A stretch of DNA of 64,000 nucleotides, taken from the IMG/VR virus record IMGVR_UViG_3300036770_004143, positions 206,076-270,075 of that record; one strand, written 5' to 3'. A model generated the notes under the pieces. It saw only the letters and a program-made list of their open reading frames with translations, ran no database searches and was not told where the DNA came from. The translations under genes were made by a program, and so were the position numbers. Shown piece after piece: positions 8,538 through 43,188 of the stretch. Numbering within the stretch: the stretch's first letter is position 1; each line of letters opens with the position of its first letter.

Positions 8538-8659
8538 TAGTCAGGGCAGGAATTGAACCTGCGTCACACTCGCTTGATACCCTACACACCTCATATTTTC
8601 ATATGGAACGGACTCGAACCGTCGTCACCAGTTGCTCTACCCATCTGAGCTACCTAACT
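8538..8659 (-). ncRNA. tRNA-like RNA F with a second, permuted T/acceptor/D module in the anticodon position
   Basis: Outer type-I tRNA frame plus inner GACGG-TTCGAGT-CCGTT, CCATAT-GAAA-ATATG, TG-TAGGGTAT-CA. Confidence 0.65.
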
Positions 8660-8721: not shown

Positions 8722-8801
8722 TAGTCAGGGCCGGATTCGAACCGGATAAGCAACCGTTTTTAATGGACTTGGAAACCATTCCGCATTACGCCCACCTGAC
8801 T
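8722..8801 (-). ncRNA. tRNA-like RNA G (possible CCA anticodon, degenerate D arm)
   Basis: Acceptor AGTCAGG/CCTGACT; ATGGT-TTCCAAG-TCCAT; CCGG-TTCGAAT-CCGG. Confidence 0.55.
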
Positions 8802-8891: not shown

Positions 8892-8971
8892 TAGTCAGGG
8901 CCGGATTCGAACCGGATAAGCAACCGTTTTTAATGGACTTGGAAACCATTCCGCATTACGCCCACATAACT
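8892..8971 (-). ncRNA. tRNA-like RNA H (duplicate of G)
   Basis: 75-bp exact direct repeat 8721-8795 = 8891-8965; differs only in the 5' acceptor strand (AGTTATG). Confidence 0.55.
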
Positions 8972-9022
8972 ATCATAATTCCTTATTGACAATTCAAAGA
9001 TACATCAATGTTTTCATAAAAC

Positions 9023-9211
9023 CTAATTTAACTTTGTATTTTGTACTACTTGAATATATATTTTATCATTCACTTGATTTTCCAATGTATCACATATTTT
9101 AAAAATTACTTGATCATGTACACCATGAGGCACTTTGTTACGTAATTGCATTACATTTAAATACCTAACGTCTTTAAATACTTGTTCAGAAACATCCATA
9201 ATTTTTGCCAT
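9023..9211 (-). CDS. hypothetical protein
   Basis: 62-aa ORF. Confidence 0.5.
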   Translation of the reverse strand: MAKIMDVSEQVFKDVRYLNVMQLRNKVPHGVHDQVIFKICDTLENQVNDKIYIQVVQNTKLN

Positions 9212-9235
9212 ACTATTGTTTTTTAAAAATTCAAG

Positions 9236-9525
9236 TTGCAGAAATGAGAAGTTATATAGACAAAAACAAAATCAAAATAAAAATCAAAGACCCAACTTAC
9301 TTCAAAGGCAAAAACAAAAACCAAGACCCTTTTTATTACATAATTAACAATTTAATGCAACCTATGTAATGTTTGGGTTCTATCCCAGTTTTATGTTTGT
9401 AAGTTGGCGGTTGTGATATTCATCATTTGTAGTTTTTTGTCAACCTTTCGGTTAACCGGTCATTAATATACCTCCCATTCCCACATAAAAGTGGGGGTGC
9501 TTAAACTCCTGCAAAACACCCCACA
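9236..9525 (-). ncRNA. candidate about 290-nt nested structured RNA
   Basis: Nested long-range helices GACAAAAA/TTTTTGTC and CCAACTTAC/GTAAGTTGG plus hairpins GTTAACC-GAAA-GGTTGAC, ATTACATA/TATGTAAT, GGGGTGT/GCACCCC. Confidence 0.45.
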
Positions 9526-9532
9526 CTACCCC

Positions 9533-10459
9533 TTACTCTTTGCTATCACCAATTGTTCCCAAGAACTGATCAACAACTGGCTTAAATCTTGCATCAACCA
9601 TAATTCTTAATGCAGCAACTCTTCCAGTTTCTTCCTGGATTTTGGAATTAAATTCTAGTTCGGCTTTCTTTCTCTTACCCTGCCATTCTTGAATTGCAAT
9701 AGAGTATTGCATATTCAACTTGTTGTTGGCCTCATTAACCAAAGTTTGTAAACCAGCATTCTCATTTGCAATTTTTGCATTCTCCAATGTAACCAGGTTC
9801 TTTACCTTTGCTTTGTAATAATTAACTTTCTGCTCATATTGTCTATGAATAGCAGATAAGTTTTTGTGCAACTCACCCAACTCATCAATTGTATGATGAA
9901 TGGTAACATTCATTGGAGTTTTCTTCTCCCTCTCTAATTCAATCCATTCCAGAGTTTTTAACTTTGGCAATTCATTTCTTAATTTATCCAATTTACCACC
10001 CTTATGGATAAACTGACCATAATGGGCAGCAAAGGCTTCTGCCTCCAAATACTCATTGTATTCGCTTGAGGTTAATTGTTGCCAACCCCACTCTTCATTT
10101 ACCTCATCCTTGTAATCAATAACCTCATAATTTGGTGATGTAGGTTGGGGGACATCAAAGGTAAATGATTTCTTTTTTAAAGCATCAAGCATCTTATCCT
10201 TTGCCTGGATATTATCCATTAGGAATGCTTGCGTTGCGTGTAGCCTTGCTTTCTCTTGAAGCAAATCCACAATGTTCTCTGGCATTTTAACTCCCTGTGT
10301 CTCAATATATACCCCACTTGGTAATGTTAAGGTCTTATGAGAGTTATTAACACTATCAATCTTTGACTGAATATCTCTTGCCTCTTGATTGCAAAGATTG
10401 GAGATTGATTGTGCTTGCGATAAAGACAACCCTTTATTGGATAATGAATTACTTCTCAT
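9533..10459 (-). CDS. coiled-coil hypothetical protein
   Basis: 308 aa, helical; EAEAFAAHYGQFIHKGG motif. Confidence 0.75.
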   Translation of the reverse strand: MRSNSLSNKGLSLSQAQSISNLCNQEARDIQSKIDSVNNSHKTLTLPSGVYIETQGVKMPENIVDLLQEKARLHATQAFLMDNIQAKDKMLDALKKKSFTFDVPQPTSPNYEVIDYKDEVNEEWGWQQLTSSEYNEYLEAEAFAAHYGQFIHKGGKLDKLRNELPKLKTLEWIELEREKKTPMNVTIHHTIDELGELHKNLSAIHRQYEQKVNYYKAKVKNLVTLENAKIANENAGLQTLVNEANNKLNMQYSIAIQEWQGKRKKAELEFNSKIQEETGRVAALRIMVDARFKPVVDQFLGTIGDSKE

Positions 10460-10484
10460 GGTTATTGTTTTTTTGGTTTAATAT

Positions 10485-10712
10485 TTATTTTAATTTACCT
10501 GAAGCATCTTTTAACATCTTTGGTAAATAGTCTTGCATTAACTGTTTTCTAGTTACTTCCCATCCAATTTCAGGCAAAGCATAATCTTCAAAGTAAGTAT
10601 ATCTAACCATACCACATAAGTTTGAACCAGCTTCTTTAACTTCATCCTCTCCCACTTTTACCTGGAATTTTCCTTCACCAAGATGAGTTATTACATAATC
10701 TTCTATTTCCAT
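10485..10712 (-). CDS. hypothetical protein
   Basis: 75-aa ORF. Confidence 0.6.
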   Translation of the reverse strand: MEIEDYVITHLGEGKFQVKVGEDEVKEAGSNLCGMVRYTYFEDYALPEIGWEVTRKQLMQDYLPKMLKDASGKLK

Positions 10713-11654: not shown

Positions 11655-12185
11655 TTAAGAAAAAATGTTATTATTATTTATATCCCAAGTTCCATCATTA
11701 TCAACTGATTTAATTTGGTTTGGTTCAAATGTAACATAAACACTATCTGAATCTTGATAATCTTCGTCATCAATCCAAGAATCTTTTACATTCACAAAGA
11801 TAACACCATCATATTTACTTCTATTTTTATAAACATTTGCCACAACTTCTCTTGTGGAAGTACCATATTCACTCTCAATATCATCCCATTTTTTGTCTTT
11901 ACAATCCAAAATTAATGGTCTTTTAATACTCAAATAAACTTCATAAACAATTCCATCCCTAGAATACCCCTCGGCATTATAATAATCAGGAGTGAAATAC
12001 GTAATACCCATAAATTCATCAAACTCTTCATATGAACCGTGATAAACAGGTAATGGTTTCCCGTTATAAGCAACTTTACTACCACTAAACCACTTCCTAA
12101 AATTATTATTTAAGTTATTTTCAACTTCTTGTTCTTCATTCAAATATTTACGTATTGTTTTTACTATAACTTTTCTTAGTTCCAT
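11655..12185 (-). CDS. ADP-ribosyltransferase-fold protein (ART-PolyVal-like)
   Basis: WFSGSKV...PVYHGS...YFTPD..A..Y...VYEVYLSIKRPL...YVTFEPNQIKS; start MELRK at 12185. Confidence 0.65.
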   Translation of the reverse strand: MELRKVIVKTIRKYLNEEQEVENNLNNNFRKWFSGSKVAYNGKPLPVYHGSYEEFDEFMGITYFTPDYYNAEGYSRDGIVYEVYLSIKRPLILDCKDKKWDDIESEYGTSTREVVANVYKNRSKYDGVIFVNVKDSWIDDEDYQDSDSVYVTFEPNQIKSVDNDGTWDINNNNIFS

Positions 12186-12198
12186 ATTATTAATTAAT

Positions 12199-12612
12199 TT
12201 AAACAGTATGTGGGACAACCCACCTTATGCAATCCTGGGGTTGTCTGGTTATATGCTTGTAGTTGTTGATATAACCCATCATATTTGCAGATCCAATTGC
12301 ATTGGCTGAATGAACCTTAACCTCACATACTGGTGCACCATCCATCCATTTTTCAACCAACCACTTGGTGCAATCCATTCCAGTTTTTTCTGTGATGTTG
12401 TTGTAGTCCAATGTGAAATTGTGATATACATTGTTATGCCACTCTTCTATGGCTGTATCACCCAAGTCGTGATCCAATGATATAAGTTTAATGTTTTCTA
12501 ACCCAAGTTCAGTTATCTTGGAAACAAATTCATCATAACTTCTAACTATAATCCATCTGATATTGCTAGTTATAGGTGTACGCACGTCATCCAAATAAAT
12601 GTTATATTTCAT
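12199..12612 (-). CDS. cyclic-phosphate-processing receiver-like domain protein
   Basis: IYLDDVRTP, ISLDHDLGD, TGMDCTKWL, VHSANAIG. Confidence 0.7.
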   Translation of the reverse strand: MKYNIYLDDVRTPITSNIRWIIVRSYDEFVSKITELGLENIKLISLDHDLGDTAIEEWHNNVYHNFTLDYNNITEKTGMDCTKWLVEKWMDGAPVCEVKVHSANAIGSANMMGYINNYKHITRQPQDCIRWVVPHTV

Positions 12613-22262: not shown

Positions 22263-23282
22263 TTAGTTTTTGTCCTTCAATAAGAACTTATTGCTAATGG
22301 CTTTAAATGAAATAACATTGTCAGATGTCCTAATTACAATACCTTCTCTTTCTGTTTTTTCATTCAAGGATGACTTACCTTCGGCAAACTTCAATAACTC
22401 ATCAATTGTTTTTGGCAAATCTGTTCCAGCCCTAATTGATAAGAGTGGTGCAACCTCCAACTGGTTCTGGGCCATAAACATAGCAAACTCTGCGTAATTA
22501 AACCTTTTGTGAGCATCAATGTCAAATGCTGTAAAGAACCTAACTGTATGACCTTTTATCTTGTAGCGATTTCCCTGGATGCCCTCACCAATCAACTCAC
22601 CTTGTATTGCAAAGTTCTTGTTTTTGGCTCTCATCTTGTTCTCCAAATCAAGTTCCCTTGCAACCTTCCAGAAAGTATTCCCCTCTGTTTCCAATAGTTC
22701 AAGATTTCTTGAACAAACCCCAAACTCACCATTGTTTATGTAGAATGTTGCAGAGGATCCATCCAGTTTTTCTGTTATATAGAAATCATCATTTGATTCT
22801 ATATATGTCTTATAATCATTTGGAATATTCTGGGCTCTAATTTCATCTGTCTTGGAAATGAAGGATGGAAACATTCCTTTTGCCAGCCCAGAAAGTTCAG
22901 GTGAAATTGGTGTTTCATACTTCACAATACCCAACATTTCTGTCACATCCATACCCTCTTCAAGAGATATTTCAGAACCTAAAACAGAAATAGGCAATAT
23001 CAACCCCTGGGAGATTTGCCCCCTCATTTTTATAGTTCTCAATCGAAAACCCTCTGCTTCAGTTGATTTCCTATATGAAGATTTCCTTAAAAATTCAAAC
23101 TCTTCCCTAATGGGTAAGAAGGAATCAATCTCACAATACACAATGAAATCACCCACCTTATGTTCAACATTCTTGGCAACAACAACTTGCCATCCATCAA
23201 CAATGGCTAGTTCAATGTTGTCAGCACCTTCAATAGGCTTTAAATCTGATATTTTTCTAACGCTTGCAAGTTTCCTTTCCAT
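22263..23282 (-). CDS. ATP-dependent RNA ligase (DRB0094/Rnl family)
   Basis: N-terminal OB-like domain, EKLDGSS motif I, QGELIG, EREGIV, FKAISNKFL. Confidence 0.9.
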   Translation of the reverse strand: MERKLASVRKISDLKPIEGADNIELAIVDGWQVVVAKNVEHKVGDFIVYCEIDSFLPIREEFEFLRKSSYRKSTEAEGFRLRTIKMRGQISQGLILPISVLGSEISLEEGMDVTEMLGIVKYETPISPELSGLAKGMFPSFISKTDEIRAQNIPNDYKTYIESNDDFYITEKLDGSSATFYINNGEFGVCSRNLELLETEGNTFWKVARELDLENKMRAKNKNFAIQGELIGEGIQGNRYKIKGHTVRFFTAFDIDAHKRFNYAEFAMFMAQNQLEVAPLLSIRAGTDLPKTIDELLKFAEGKSSLNEKTEREGIVIRTSDNVISFKAISNKFLLKDKN

Positions 23283-41808: not shown

Positions 41809-43188
41809 TCATTTATTATTTCTGATAATTCTTTTTACATCAGATTTGCTAATATTCCAATTTTTAGCAACATTTTCCACAATTTTATCAAATCTCAAAG
41901 GAGAATTAACCGCCTCCTCAATACCCCCAATGTCAATTGTTCCAAATCCTTTTAATTTATCAAATGCTGGATTTTGCTCAATAGGGTCTTTCTTTGCTTG
42001 TTTCATAACACCCCAGGTAGATGGCTTCATTTTCATATGATTAATAACCAAATATTCAATAACATCAACATTTGCCCCCTCAAATGATTCAATCCAATCA
42101 GCATATTGTTTCACATATTCAGCAGATTTTGCATCATGACCATATGCTGTTGGTTCATTTGTTTTTGGGTTAATAGCATAAGTATCCATCTTACCCAAAT
42201 CATGAAATAAAGCAGCCATAATCATATTTGGATCATCCCCATATTTGTTATATGCTCTCCTTAATACCAAAATTATATGTTTTAATGAGTTACCCTCTGG
42301 ATGCCATTTACTTGTTTGTTTTGCACCCCATTGGTCAAAAAGTAACTTCTTTAAATCTTGTGGTAATGACCTAATAAGGTCTTGTGCTGTGCCTGGAATT
42401 TCTCTCTTGTTCATATTTTGTTCAGTTAATTTTAACGCACCAATATCCCCCTGGTTACAGTAGGGGAATTTTAAACACTTCTTCTTTACTTGCACAAATT
42501 GCCCTCCTGGTATTTGTGTTTTACTCTTCCCTCTCCAATCTTTTTTCTTCATAGATTTCGCCCACATCCCTGGAACTTCATACGACCCTGTGGATGAAGT
42601 TGTAGTTGCTTCCTTGGCTTCCACCTTCCCTTCATTAAATATAGGCTTAAAATTAACTTCTGTCCACTTATTCTCCTTTATTGGAACACAATTTGGAACC
42701 ATTTTTCCATTCTTCATTTTTCCACCAACTCTCCTATATCCTTTCCAACACGCTTCACTCATATTCTCAAGGTTGGGGAATAATGGTGCAACATAACCAC
42801 CAGATGAACCTGAACCAGTTGCTTCCTTAGTTTCCATCTTTGTTAATTTAACATAATATTTAGGATCCTCTAAAAGATGGTCTTTTGCAATCTGTATAGC
42901 AATTTTAATACTACTAGTATGTTCTTTCTCAATTTTAGCACCTTTGTTTAGTTGTTTTTCCAAGAAAGCAATATAATCCATTGAATCTTGTGTTTTATTG
43001 TGTTTTCTTTCAATATCTACTAAAGATATATCTCTTTTTTTTAAATCCATTTTATCATCTTCTTTAATTTCTCCATCATTAACCATCCTAATATACTTGA
43101 ATTGTTCTGGATATGACTTAGAACTTTTTGAGAATTCATTAGCAATGGTATTTGCAAAAAGTTTATTTGAATCTTCCATATTATGCAT
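41809..43188 (-). CDS. mosaic protein: DUF5661-like module, CWKGY...VPNCVP module, HD phosphohydrolase
   Basis: GAKIEKEHT...IAKDHL.EDPKYY; ACWKGY..VG.KMK.GKMVPNCVP; WHPEG...H...ALFHDLGK. Confidence 0.7.
   Translation of the reverse strand: MHNMEDSNKLFANTIANEFSKSSKSYPEQFKYIRMVNDGEIKEDDKMDLKKRDISLVDIERKHNKTQDSMDYIAFLEKQLNKGAKIEKEHTSSIKIAIQIAKDHLLEDPKYYVKLTKMETKEATGSGSSGGYVAPLFPNLENMSEACWKGYRRVGGKMKNGKMVPNCVPIKENKWTEVNFKPIFNEGKVEAKEATTTSSTGSYEVPGMWAKSMKKKDWRGKSKTQIPGGQFVQVKKKCLKFPYCNQGDIGALKLTEQNMNKREIPGTAQDLIRSLPQDLKKLLFDQWGAKQTSKWHPEGNSLKHIILVLRRAYNKYGDDPNMIMAALFHDLGKMDTYAINPKTNEPTAYGHDAKSAEYVKQYADWIESFEGANVDVIEYLVINHMKMKPSTWGVMKQAKKDPIEQNPAFDKLKGFGTIDIGGIEEAVNSPLRFDKIVENVAKNWNISKSDVKRIIRNNK

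What the first reader, a model, noticed from the sequence alone, without database searches (positions are those of the whole stretch)
9236..9525. Large nested RNA structure with U-rich repeats directly downstream of a coiled-coil gene
Seen (minus strand): starting about 10 nt after the stop of 9533-10459 are a GGGGTGT/GCACCCC hairpin and a GTTAACC-GAAA-GGTTGAC hairpin. These are followed by nested GACAAAAA...TTTTTGTC (9432-9441/9259-9267) and CCAACTTAC...GTAAGTTGG (9399-9407/9292-9300) enclosing two more hairpins. The loop TTGCAGGA of the first hairpin can pair with TTCTGCAA at the 3' end (pseudoknot). The 3' half carries (T)5G-type repeats. Inference: a protein-associated ncRNA, possibly forming an RNP with the upstream protein.
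Basis: partly seen in the sequence, partly recalled or inferred. Interest (0 to 1): 0.6.

Follow-up and report, generated by a model that had tools for sequence, protein, structure and literature searches.

The report
New phage RNA with hexamer arrays
Directly behind a conserved gene of unknown function, this uncultivated giant phage and hundreds of its relatives encode an undescribed, transcribed, folded RNA of about 300 bases; the RNA displays two rows of six-base U-rich repeats that look like docking sites for a protein.

Summary
Window 9233-9532 (minus strand) is one copy of a conserved ~300-nt non-coding RNA. It starts at the stop codon of the 308-aa gene (9533-10459).

- **Linkage:** all 78 related loci that keep DNA behind the gene carry the RNA. 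All 102 loci found through an RNA 17-mer alone, with room upstream, carry the gene. Flanking genes are not conserved.
- **Structure:** 52 core base pairs are 89% canonical, against 70% in shuffles. 46 of them show compensatory double changes. The proposed pseudoknot is not conserved.
- **Repeats:** the U-rich repeats form two arrays with G at every sixth base (0.82-1.0 at 10 of 11 in-phase columns, 0.02 off phase). Even relatives with 21-34% protein identity keep them. No conserved pairing partner was found.
- **Known families:** Rfam 15, Pfam, PHROGs, NCBIfam, PADLOC, PDB and the paper library give no match for RNA or protein.
- **Expression:** contigs from four metatranscriptome studies lie on the element.

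Best reading: a stable RNA that presents six-base-register sites to a protein, most likely its co-encoded partner. Host cold-shock proteins are the main alternative. Binding is untested.

The parts
9533..10459 (-). Gene for the 308-aa partner protein. It is helical, with two helix / beta-hairpin / long-helix repeats, and belongs to no known family.
   Evidence: ORF. No hit in Pfam, PHROGs, NCBIfam, PADLOC or PDB sequences. AF2 model pLDDT 83.8 with no informative fold match. Family of 786 clusters at 50% identity. Superfamily-invariant residues: A16, K87, G148, H152, L201, H205, N213, K216.
9233..9532 (-). The whole structured RNA element, about 300 nt.
   Evidence: nhmmer profile hit at 9531..9234, E = 2.7e-44, a single copy in the window and in the 270-kb genome. 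Helix map. Metatranscriptome contigs lie at 9239-9519, 9296-9517, 9409-9518, 9185-9336 and 9442-9644.
9528..9532 (-). P0, 5' strand of the terminal helix (family pattern N4-8 GGU). It pairs with 9233-9237 and begins directly after the stop codon.
   Evidence: Columns 8-10 with 495-497 are 94% canonical, against 65% in shuffles. MI ranks pair 9-496 second of all column pairs. The helix extends outward to 4-10 bp in relatives.
9233..9237 (-). P0, 3' strand (family pattern AAC N4-8); the 3' end of the element.
9490..9527 (-). Stem 9516-9527 with 9490-9500; apical region 9501-9515.
   Evidence: All 10 pairs show compensatory double changes: 259 such cells against 94 in shuffles. An inner 3-bp stem with an ANRA loop is conserved. 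A UAA/GAN-like internal loop occurs in 40 of 76 relatives but not in this copy.
9470..9485 (-). P2a (9478-9485) and P2b (9470-9477), 5' strands of the long-range closing helix.
   Evidence: P2a is 95% canonical against 70% in shuffles, with 199 double-change cells. P2b has 173.
9237..9252 (-). P2a (9237-9244) and P2b (9246-9252), 3' strands.
9410..9469 (-). V1, a hypervariable A-rich stretch. In this phage it holds the GNRA-capped hairpin at 9439-9456.
   Evidence: Poorly alignable. Relatives have a small local hairpin with clade-level covariation. Pairing with array 2 appears in single-sequence folds only.
9399..9407 (-). P4, 5' strand (CCAACUUAC here, CUUCCnUUAC in most relatives).
   Evidence: Pairs with 9292-9300. 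8 of 9 pairs show double changes, 99 cells against 39 in shuffles.
9292..9300 (-). P4, 3' strand (GUAAGUUGG). It separates the two hexamer arrays.
9374..9387 (-). Hairpin PA (UGGG-AUAGAA-CCCA). It is part of the 17-mer that is identical in at least 120 viral contigs.
   Evidence: GAG/CUC in most relatives becomes GGG/CCC here and AGG/CCU in L054. The 17-mer scan is.
9335..9370 (-). Hairpin P7, with a variable apical insert.
   Evidence: 96.5% canonical against 79.5% in shuffles. 7 of 8 pairs show double changes.
9303..9330 (-). Hexamer array 1 (units nnUUUG, G every 6 nt).
   Evidence: In-phase G frequency is 0.95-1.0; off-phase is 0.015. Unpaired in all three clade consensus folds. Kept in distant variants.
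9259..9291 (-). Hexamer array 2. It starts with the near-invariant G-GUCUUUG-A.
   Evidence: In-phase G frequency is 0.82-1.0 at five columns and 0.58 at the sixth; off-phase is 0.026. Period-6 power is 1.06 against a shuffle mean of 0.17 and 99th percentile of 0.76. GUCUUUG occurs in 60 of 76 elements. Unpaired in clade consensus folds.

Best explanation
Window 9233-9532 (minus strand) encodes a member of an undescribed family of ~300-nt structured RNAs. The family occurs in uncultivated large phages of fresh and subsurface waters.

Shown:
- The RNA begins at the stop codon of a conserved ~300-aa gene.
- Its two ends are closed by covarying helices (P0, P2).
- It carries a conserved apical hairpin (P1), an inner helix (P4) and usually two more hairpins (PA, P7).
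- This scaffold displays two arrays of 4-6 pyrimidine-rich hexamers (nnUUUG, with G at every sixth base).
- The arrays are the most conserved part of the family and have no conserved pairing partner.

Inferred:
- The RNA is made as the 3' end of the partner gene's transcript and persists as a stable RNA.
- The helices act as a frame that holds the arrays out as binding sites for a protein that reads about six bases per subunit or domain.
- The most likely ligand is the co-encoded protein, giving a phage ribonucleoprotein of unknown downstream role.
- The surrounding tRNA, RNA-ligase and ornate-RNA neighbourhood hints at RNA metabolism.
For: - **Family and linkage:** one full-length copy lies behind the protein gene in every related locus with downstream DNA. 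102 of 102 loci found by the RNA 17-mer alone, with room upstream, have the gene on the same strand. Relatives with 21-34% protein identity are still followed by a 250-520-nt gene-free gap. Wherever DNA could be fetched, that gap holds a recognisable RNA. No other neighbour is conserved.
- **Structure:** 52 core pairs are 89.2% canonical, against 70.3% (maximum 71.5%) in 300 shuffles. 46 of 52 have double compensatory changes, 914 cells against a shuffle mean of 328 and maximum of 386. Slid controls are far lower. An unbiased MI ranking returns the same helices.
- **Strand and coding:** the fold is strand-specific. No ORF is present and element lengths are spread over all three residues mod 3.
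- **Arrays:** G frequency is 0.82-1.0 at 10 of 11 in-phase columns (0.58 at the last) and about 0.02 off phase. Period-6 power exceeds the 99th percentile of shuffles. The arrays are retained in the minimal variant L238, which lacks PA and P7. They are unpaired in all three clade consensus folds. Their mean single-sequence pairing probability is 0.57-0.59, against 0.72-0.92 for core helices.
- **Expression:** contigs from four metatranscriptome studies lie on the element. One 281-nt contig spans 9239-9519 and one bridges the stop codon. None lies on 8900-9184.
- **Protein:** the polar residues invariant across the superfamily are K87, H152, H205, N213 and K216. R161, R206 and E209 are nearly invariant. 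This fits a nucleic-acid-binding surface but does not prove one.
Against: - No binding data exist, and no tool here can model protein-RNA contacts.
- The protein has pI 6.5 and no known RNA-binding fold.
- Strict linkage would also follow from a purely cis-acting role in the gene's own mRNA.
- In some phages 1-3 small ORFs separate the gene and the RNA.
- The array unit matches the published best site of a host-type protein, CspB (PMC1904285). This points to a different ligand.
- Expression evidence comes from assembled contigs only. These cannot show ends, strand or level, and DNA carry-over in RNA libraries is not formally excluded.
Confidence: 0.45

Rival explanations
1. Decoy or recruiter for host cold-shock-domain proteins. 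The arrays are tandem high-affinity sites for host Csp proteins, which have six base subsites per domain. The RNA would either titrate Csp proteins or load them onto the transcript. The upstream gene would be linked only through co-transcription or a related function.
For: - The near-invariant start of array 2 is G-U-C-U-U-U-G. GUCUUUG occurs in 60 of 76 elements, against about 0.02 per element in shuffles.
- B. subtilis CspB prefers 5'-GTCTTTG/T-3', with C at position 3 and T at positions 2, 4 and 6 (PMC1904285).
- Cold-shock proteins have six conserved base subsites, bind RNA like DNA, and were crystallised with GUCUUUA (PMC7825780).
- The six-base period fits one domain per unit.
- The arrays lack a conserved pairing partner.
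- The phage itself encodes no cold-shock domain, so any such ligand would come from the host.
Against: - It does not by itself explain the absolute linkage to the 300-aa gene.
- Cold-shock proteins have limited sequence selectivity, and RNA binds about 10-fold weaker than DNA (PMC7825780).
- The host is unknown.
- Many array units deviate from GUCUUUG (AUUUUG, CCUUUG, UCUUAG).
- The motif match could be coincidence in a U-rich RNA.
Confidence: 0.2
2. Cis-acting 3' untranslated region. The folded element stabilises the partner gene's mRNA against 3' exonucleases, or mediates feedback control of that mRNA. It would have no role as a free RNA.
For: - It starts at the stop codon on the same strand.
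- A metatranscriptome contig bridges the gene and the element.
- Intrinsic terminators follow the element within 15-30 nt in many relatives.
- Linkage to one gene is strict.
Against: - A 17-mer identical in at least 120 contigs, and period-6 arrays conserved down to 21-34% protein identity, go far beyond what a protective 3' structure needs.
- A terminal helix joining the first and last bases is typical of free-standing RNAs.
- Small ORFs can be inserted between the gene and the element without loss of the element.
- Tentatively, in three of four RNA runs the contig on the element has a higher k-mer depth than the ORF contigs. Contig depth is a poor measure.
Confidence: 0.15
3. RNA-only ornate assembly or ribozyme, in the manner of GOLLD or ROOL. 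The RNA would act on its own, for example as a multimeric cage or a catalyst, within the tRNA-rich region of large phages.
For: - Relatives carry GOLLD, a Hatchet ribozyme, a group I intron and long tRNA arrays within a few kb of the module.
- tRNA genes directly follow the element in several loci.
- A UAA/GAN-like tertiary-contact motif sits in P1 in 40 of 76 members (motif described in PMC12550061).
Against: - No similarity to any Rfam model.
- It is much smaller than GOLLD or ROOL.
- GOLLD and ROOL are not tied to one protein gene.
- About a quarter of the RNA is low-complexity U-rich sequence without conserved pairing, which is unlike a compact catalytic core.
Confidence: 0.1
4. No single element. 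P1 would be just the intrinsic terminator of the 308-aa gene and the rest a spacer, or the region would code on the opposite strand.
For: - P1 is a GC-rich stem followed by UUUUAU.
- The plus strand has TTG-started ORFs of 54 and 70 aa across the region.
Against: - P0 and P2 pair sequences on either side of P1 with the far 3' end, with strong covariation. The RNA must therefore read through P1.
- The P1 loop is conserved, unlike terminator loops.
- RNA contigs cover the region downstream of P1.
- Neither strand keeps an open frame across relatives: the median longest stop-free run is 40-45 codons, and lengths fall in all classes mod 3.
Confidence: 0.02

Closest known systems
GOLLD and ROOL RNAs (large ornate RNAs of phages and prophages)
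   Same: Orphan, strongly covarying structured RNAs of unknown function carried by phages, typically beside tRNA genes. GOLLD itself lies a few kb from this module in relatives L034 and L052.
   Different: No sequence or structure match. The element is ~300 nt rather than roughly 600-800 nt (sizes from my own knowledge). It is invariably coupled to one protein gene and is built around single-stranded hexamer arrays. The RNA-only cages of GOLLD and ROOL (bioRxiv 10.1101/2024.12.08.627333) were not tested here.
Protein-titrating RNAs with repeated short sites (CsrB/RsmZ for CsrA; TRAP-binding (G/U)AG repeats in the trp leader). Comparison from my own knowledge.
   Same: Many copies of a short motif at regular spacing, held on a structured frame, serve as a multivalent platform for an oligomeric RNA-binding protein.
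   Different: The motif (nnUUUG, period 6), the scaffold, the phage origin and the linkage to a co-encoded protein all differ. Binding is not demonstrated here.
Cold-shock protein sites (CspB heptamer GTCTTTG/T; GUCUUUA-CspB crystal 3pf4)
   Same: The array unit and the invariant GUCUUUG equal the published optimum. The six-base period equals the six base subsites of a cold-shock domain (PMC1904285, PMC7825780).
   Different: That optimum was defined on ssDNA oligonucleotides for a Bacillus protein. To my knowledge no natural tandem Csp-site RNA of this kind is known. The host and its Csp proteins are unknown.
TnpB/Fanzor omega-RNA (reRNA) modules. Comparison from my own knowledge.
   Same: A structured RNA is encoded at and just beyond the 3' end of its partner protein gene and forms an RNP with it.
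   Different: The partner here has no RuvC or any nuclease signature. The RNA's 3' end is locked into helices P0 and P2, rather than being a free variable guide.
Six-bases-per-subunit encapsidation signals (paramyxovirus 'rule of six'; TMV assembly origin with G every third base). Comparison from my own knowledge.
   Same: A purine at a fixed period marks the register of a protein that coats single-stranded RNA.
   Different: These belong to eukaryotic RNA viruses and act on genomes. Here there are two short arrays inside a folded small RNA of a DNA phage.

Membership tests
Any Rfam 15 family | Covariance-model match at or near the gathering score | tested here: not met
   Nothing at gathering in the window. 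The only E < 10 matches in 9211-9433 are chance-level snoR16 and mir-M7. Nothing lies on the element in 10 diverse relatives at E <= 0.5.
GOLLD / ROOL ornate phage RNAs | Match to RF02032 or the ROOL model | tested here: not met
   GOLLD hits occur elsewhere in L034 and L052, not on the element. There is no GOLLD in the window's own genome. ROOL was covered only by the all-family scans.
GOLLD / ROOL ornate phage RNAs | Phage-borne and adjacent to tRNA genes | tested here: met
   tRNA genes lie downstream in the window and directly after the element in L009, L021, L034, L035, L026 and L123.
GOLLD / ROOL ornate phage RNAs | RNA-only homo-oligomeric assembly | not testable with these tools
   Needs SEC or cryo-EM.
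TnpB/IscB-type omega-RNA modules | Partner protein with a RuvC (and HNH) nuclease fold | tested here: not met
   No Pfam or NCBIfam hit. The AF2 model is helical with two beta-hairpins and has no nuclease match.
TnpB/IscB-type omega-RNA modules | Free variable guide segment at one RNA end | tested here: not met
   Both ends are paired to each other in covarying helices P0 and P2.
Type III toxin-antitoxin (ToxIN-like) | Tandem ~34-36-nt RNA repeats upstream of an endoribonuclease toxin gene | tested here: not met
   The RNA lies downstream of the gene and the repeats are 6 nt. There is no PADLOC hit.
Intrinsic terminator (P1 alone) | Transcription ends at the U-run after the stem; the loop is unconstrained | tested here: not met
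   Helices P0 and P2 span P1. The P1 loop is conserved. RNA contigs continue beyond it.
Cold-shock-protein binding sites (works-like claim only) | Pyrimidine-rich heptamer GUCUUUG/U in single-stranded context | tested here: met
   GUCUUUG occurs in 60 of 76 elements. In the window, the first hexamer of array 2 and the G before it (9285-9291) read GUCUUUG. The arrays are unpaired in consensus folds.
Cold-shock-protein binding sites (works-like claim only) | Measured binding of a cold-shock protein | not testable with these tools
   Needs EMSA or ITC with host or model Csp proteins.
   Complex prediction takes no RNA. Needs co-purification or EMSA.

The most novel reading that the evidence does not exclude
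A new kind of phage ribonucleoprotein. An uncharacterised helical protein, or captured host cold-shock proteins, would assemble in a six-base register on two U-rich arrays displayed by a dedicated RNA scaffold. This would be a bacterial-virus counterpart of register-defined RNA coating. It might be used to control or hijack RNA metabolism, for example tRNA or mRNA handling or RNA chaperones, during infection by large freshwater phages.
Probability: 0.35. Interest if true: 0.9.

Novelty: categorically new. Interest (0 to 1): 0.8.

Why it matters
- It adds a widespread two-part module to the small set of large, strongly covarying orphan RNAs of phages.
- DNA holders come from subsurface, river, lake and run-off metagenomes of 13 studies.
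- Unlike GOLLD or ROOL, it comes with a dedicated protein gene and an obvious candidate interaction surface, the six-base arrays. Function is therefore directly testable with one RNA and one protein made in vitro.
- If the arrays capture host cold-shock proteins, this would be the first RNA decoy for that chaperone family that I know of.
- If they bind the partner protein, it defines a new RNA-binding fold and a new RNP.

Tried and rejected
- **Rfam:** gathering and permissive scans of the window and 10 relatives gave no family on the element.
- **Cultured phages:** GenBank phages gave no blastn match to the region and no tblastn match to the protein, so there is no cultured relative.
- **Bacterial genomes:** the 17-mer gave 34 hits, about the chance number. 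Only one is real, on a 3.7-kb contig binned into an Omnitrophota MAG that also carries the protein. This gives no host clue and no prophage copies.
- **Protein annotation:** Pfam, PHROGs, NCBIfam, PADLOC, a PDB profile search, Foldseek PDB and BFVD, VIA-align wide, and the ESM atlas by features and by shape found only unnamed relatives or generic helical matches with Z < 8. Weak echoes of the seryl-tRNA synthetase coiled-coil arm (Pfam E = 6e-4 in one distant member; VIA Z = 6.7) were judged non-specific.
not conserved.
- **Other candidate long-range pairings:** the P1 apex AAGC with GCUU of P4, CUGAG with CUUAG, and loop AUAGA with UCUAU have few or no compensatory changes, or are broken in the window. 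I left them out (and inspection).
- **Conserved pairing of the arrays with the A-rich strands:** seen in single-sequence folds but absent from clade consensus folds.
- **Coding on either strand:** rejected.
- **Conserved neighbours or an operon:** none.
- **GOLLD or a cold-shock gene in this phage's own genome:** none.
- **Literature:** searches for the conserved sequences and for phage RNA surveys found nothing on this element.
- I did not run the count of structure pairs or build_rna_model. They need a 500-character structure string or exceed the model-size forecast. Equivalent pair counts with shuffles and slid controls were computed in Python. Complex prediction was not used, because no protein-protein claim is made.

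Full report
**Setting.** The window is the last 64 kb of a 270-kb IMG/VR phage record. It has about 31% G+C, and nearly all genes lie on the minus strand. It holds many tRNA genes, an RNA ligase, an HD-domain protein and an ART-PolyVal protein. The finding lies in the 321-nt gap between the 308-aa ORF (9533-10459, minus) and a 62-aa ORF (9023-9211, minus). Only the standard bacterial code was used.

**Check of the observation.** The minus-strand RNA folds at -91.3 kcal/mol, z = -4.5 against dinucleotide shuffles. The plus strand gives only -61.4, z = -1.95. This fits G-U-rich RNA structure read in the direction of the genes.

**Relatives.**
- The 308-aa protein has 2330 word-search relatives. 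A profile built from its relatives finds 786 clusters at 50% identity.
- Eighty viral loci were fetched through the protein. In all 78 with DNA behind the gene, a DNA profile built from 41 downstream regions finds exactly one copy of the element, cut short by the contig end in two.
- In some loci one to three small ORFs are inserted between the gene and the RNA. The RNA is retained.
Of 108 such loci with a full element, 102 have the protein gene upstream on the same strand. None lacks it when 1 kb or more is available.
- Flanking genes are not conserved.
- Protein relatives at 21-34% identity are still followed by a 250-520-nt gene-free gap. Wherever DNA could be fetched, that gap holds a recognisable, diverged RNA.
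- The element is absent from bacterial genomes, apart from one short contig binned into a MAG. It is also absent from GenBank phages.

**Structure.** I aligned 76 non-redundant elements (A2).
- RNAalifold, an unbiased mutual-information scan and a diagonal scan for covarying helices agree on the same helices:
  - P0, a terminal helix (N4-8 GGU ... AAC N4-8) that starts at or over the stop codon and ends the element.
  - P2a and P2b, a long-range helix that joins the region after P1 to the 3' end.
  - PA, the hairpin UGAG-AUAGAA-CUCA.
  - P7, a hairpin with a variable apical insert.
- For these 52 pairs, 89.2% of cells are canonical, against 70.3% (maximum 71.5%) in 300 column shuffles. 46 pairs have double compensatory changes, 914 cells against a shuffle mean of 328 and maximum of 386. 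Sliding the partner by 1-2 columns destroys the signal.
- The window's own copy forms nearly all of these pairs.
Its 3' arm belongs to P2a.
- The stretch V1, between P2 and P4, is hypervariable and usually holds a small hairpin that covaries within clades. In this phage that hairpin is the GNRA-capped one at 9439-9456.
- The P1 apex carries a conserved inner 3-bp stem with an ANRA loop. In 40 of 76 members it also has a UAA/GAN-type internal loop. [quoted passage not shown] The window's copy lacks it.
- No frame is open on either strand across the family.

**The repeats.** The '(T)5G repeats' resolve into two arrays of six-base units on either side of the 3' strand of P4.
- Array 1 is 9303-9330 and array 2 is 9259-9291.
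- G frequency at the 11 in-phase columns is 0.82-1.0 at ten and 0.58 at the last. It is about 0.02 at all other columns.
- Period-6 Fourier power is 1.06, against a shuffle mean of 0.17 and a 99th percentile of 0.76.
- The arrays persist in the most distant relatives. They also persist in a minimal variant (L238/L239) that has lost PA and P7. They are therefore the universal core of the family.
- Single-sequence folds pair them loosely with the A-rich opposite strands (mean pairing probability 0.57-0.59, against 0.72-0.92 for the core helices). No consensus fold of three separate clades pairs them with anything.
- I read them as single-stranded or easily melted platforms.

**Expression.**
- DNA runs from 13 studies of subsurface, river, lake and run-off water hold the stretch, and six metatranscriptome runs hold part of it.
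- I laid four RNA runs from four studies on 8900-10700.
- All four have contigs on the element: 9239-9519 (281 nt), 9296-9517, 9409-9518, and 9185-9336 plus 9442-9644.
- The last contig bridges the stop codon. No run covers 8900-9184.
- These are assembled contigs, so they show presence in RNA libraries. They do not show ends, strand or level.
- In three studies, contigs on the element end at 9517-9519. In two of those runs a separate ORF contig starts at 9525 or 9533. I leave this unexplained.
- Many relatives have an intrinsic terminator 15-30 nt after the element, or a tRNA gene directly after it.

**The protein.**
- There is no hit in Pfam, PHROGs, NCBIfam, PADLOC or PDB sequences.
- The AlphaFold model (pLDDT 83.8, pTM 0.78) shows two helix / beta-hairpin / long-helix repeats plus a helical hairpin.
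- Foldseek on PDB finds nothing. BFVD finds only an unnamed family member. VIA-align and the atlas give generic helical matches.
- Its pI is 6.5.
- The polar residues invariant across the whole superfamily are K87, H152, H205, N213 and K216. R161, R206 and E209 are nearly invariant. This is compatible with nucleic-acid binding but is no proof. The costly representative search was used because every other search left the protein open.

**What it most likely is and does.**
- Shown: a new, widespread, transcribed, structured RNA that forms an obligate genetic pair with a new protein family.
- Inferred: the helices form a frame whose purpose is to present two arrays of six-base units to a protein that reads about six bases per subunit.
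- The co-encoded protein is the first candidate, because of the absolute linkage.
- The main alternative is host cold-shock proteins. The invariant GUCUUUG equals the best heptamer of B. subtilis CspB (PMC1904285). Cold-shock domains have six base subsites and bind GUCUUUA RNA in crystals (PMC7825780). The phage has no cold-shock gene of its own.
- A purely cis-acting 3' UTR, or an RNA-only ornate assembly, remain possible.
- The neighbourhood in relatives holds GOLLD, a Hatchet ribozyme, a group I intron and tRNA arrays. This places the module in the RNA-rich island of these phages.

**Comparison with known systems.** It is not a member of any Rfam family. It is not a TnpB/IscB omega-RNA module, a type III toxin-antitoxin pair or a plain terminator (see the membership table). 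In genomic setting it works most like GOLLD and ROOL. In logic it works most like multi-site protein-binding RNAs such as CsrB or TRAP targets. It differs from all of them in motif, scaffold and its dedicated partner gene.

**Verdict.**
- The feature is real with probability above 0.95.
- The RNP-with-partner mechanism has probability about 0.45, and the cold-shock decoy about 0.2.
- I found no earlier description in Rfam 15 or the paper library, and I rate it a new class.
- No step had to be referred.

Noticed in passing
window 8538-8659 (-) and 8722-8801 (-): One tRNA (43 bits) has a 59-nt insert in the anticodon region. A second tRNA-like sequence scores 23 bits, below the Rfam cut-off. ARAGORN lists neither. 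They may be intron-bearing or degenerate phage tRNAs just downstream of the element.
   Followed up: no
L034 5034-5448; L052 41-530; L076 712-848; L034 3780-3967: Related phages carry GOLLD RNA (306 and 131 bits), a Hatchet ribozyme (81 bits) and a group I intron (61 bits) within a few kb of the protein+RNA module, amid long tRNA arrays. The window's own genome has no GOLLD.
   Followed up: partly
L020, L053, L057, L060, L062, L065, L071, L075 (between gene and RNA): One to three small ORFs (64-102 aa) are inserted exactly between the stop codon region of the partner gene and the first helix of the RNA. The sequence AAUAAUUU-GGU at the RNA's start is kept. They look like mobile small genes that target this junction.
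   Followed up: no
window 11655-12218 (-), 22263-23282 (-), 41809-43188 (-): An ART-PolyVal ADP-ribosyltransferase domain protein, an RNA ligase with a PHA02142 OB domain, and a DUF5661+HD protein. Together they suggest an RNA-repair or RNA-modification gene set in the same genome arm.
   Followed up: no
window 9517-9533: In three independent metatranscriptome assemblies, contigs on the element stop at 9517-9519, inside the 5' strand of P1. In two of those runs a separate ORF contig starts at 9525 or 9533. One contig, at 9409-9518, is flanked by adaptor sequence on both sides. This could be a processing site or an assembly effect.
   Followed up: partly
L238/L239 (distant relative): A minimal variant of the RNA lacks hairpins PA and P7 but keeps P0, P1, P2, P4 and both hexamer arrays. 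It is a natural deletion that marks the arrays as the essential part.
   Followed up: partly
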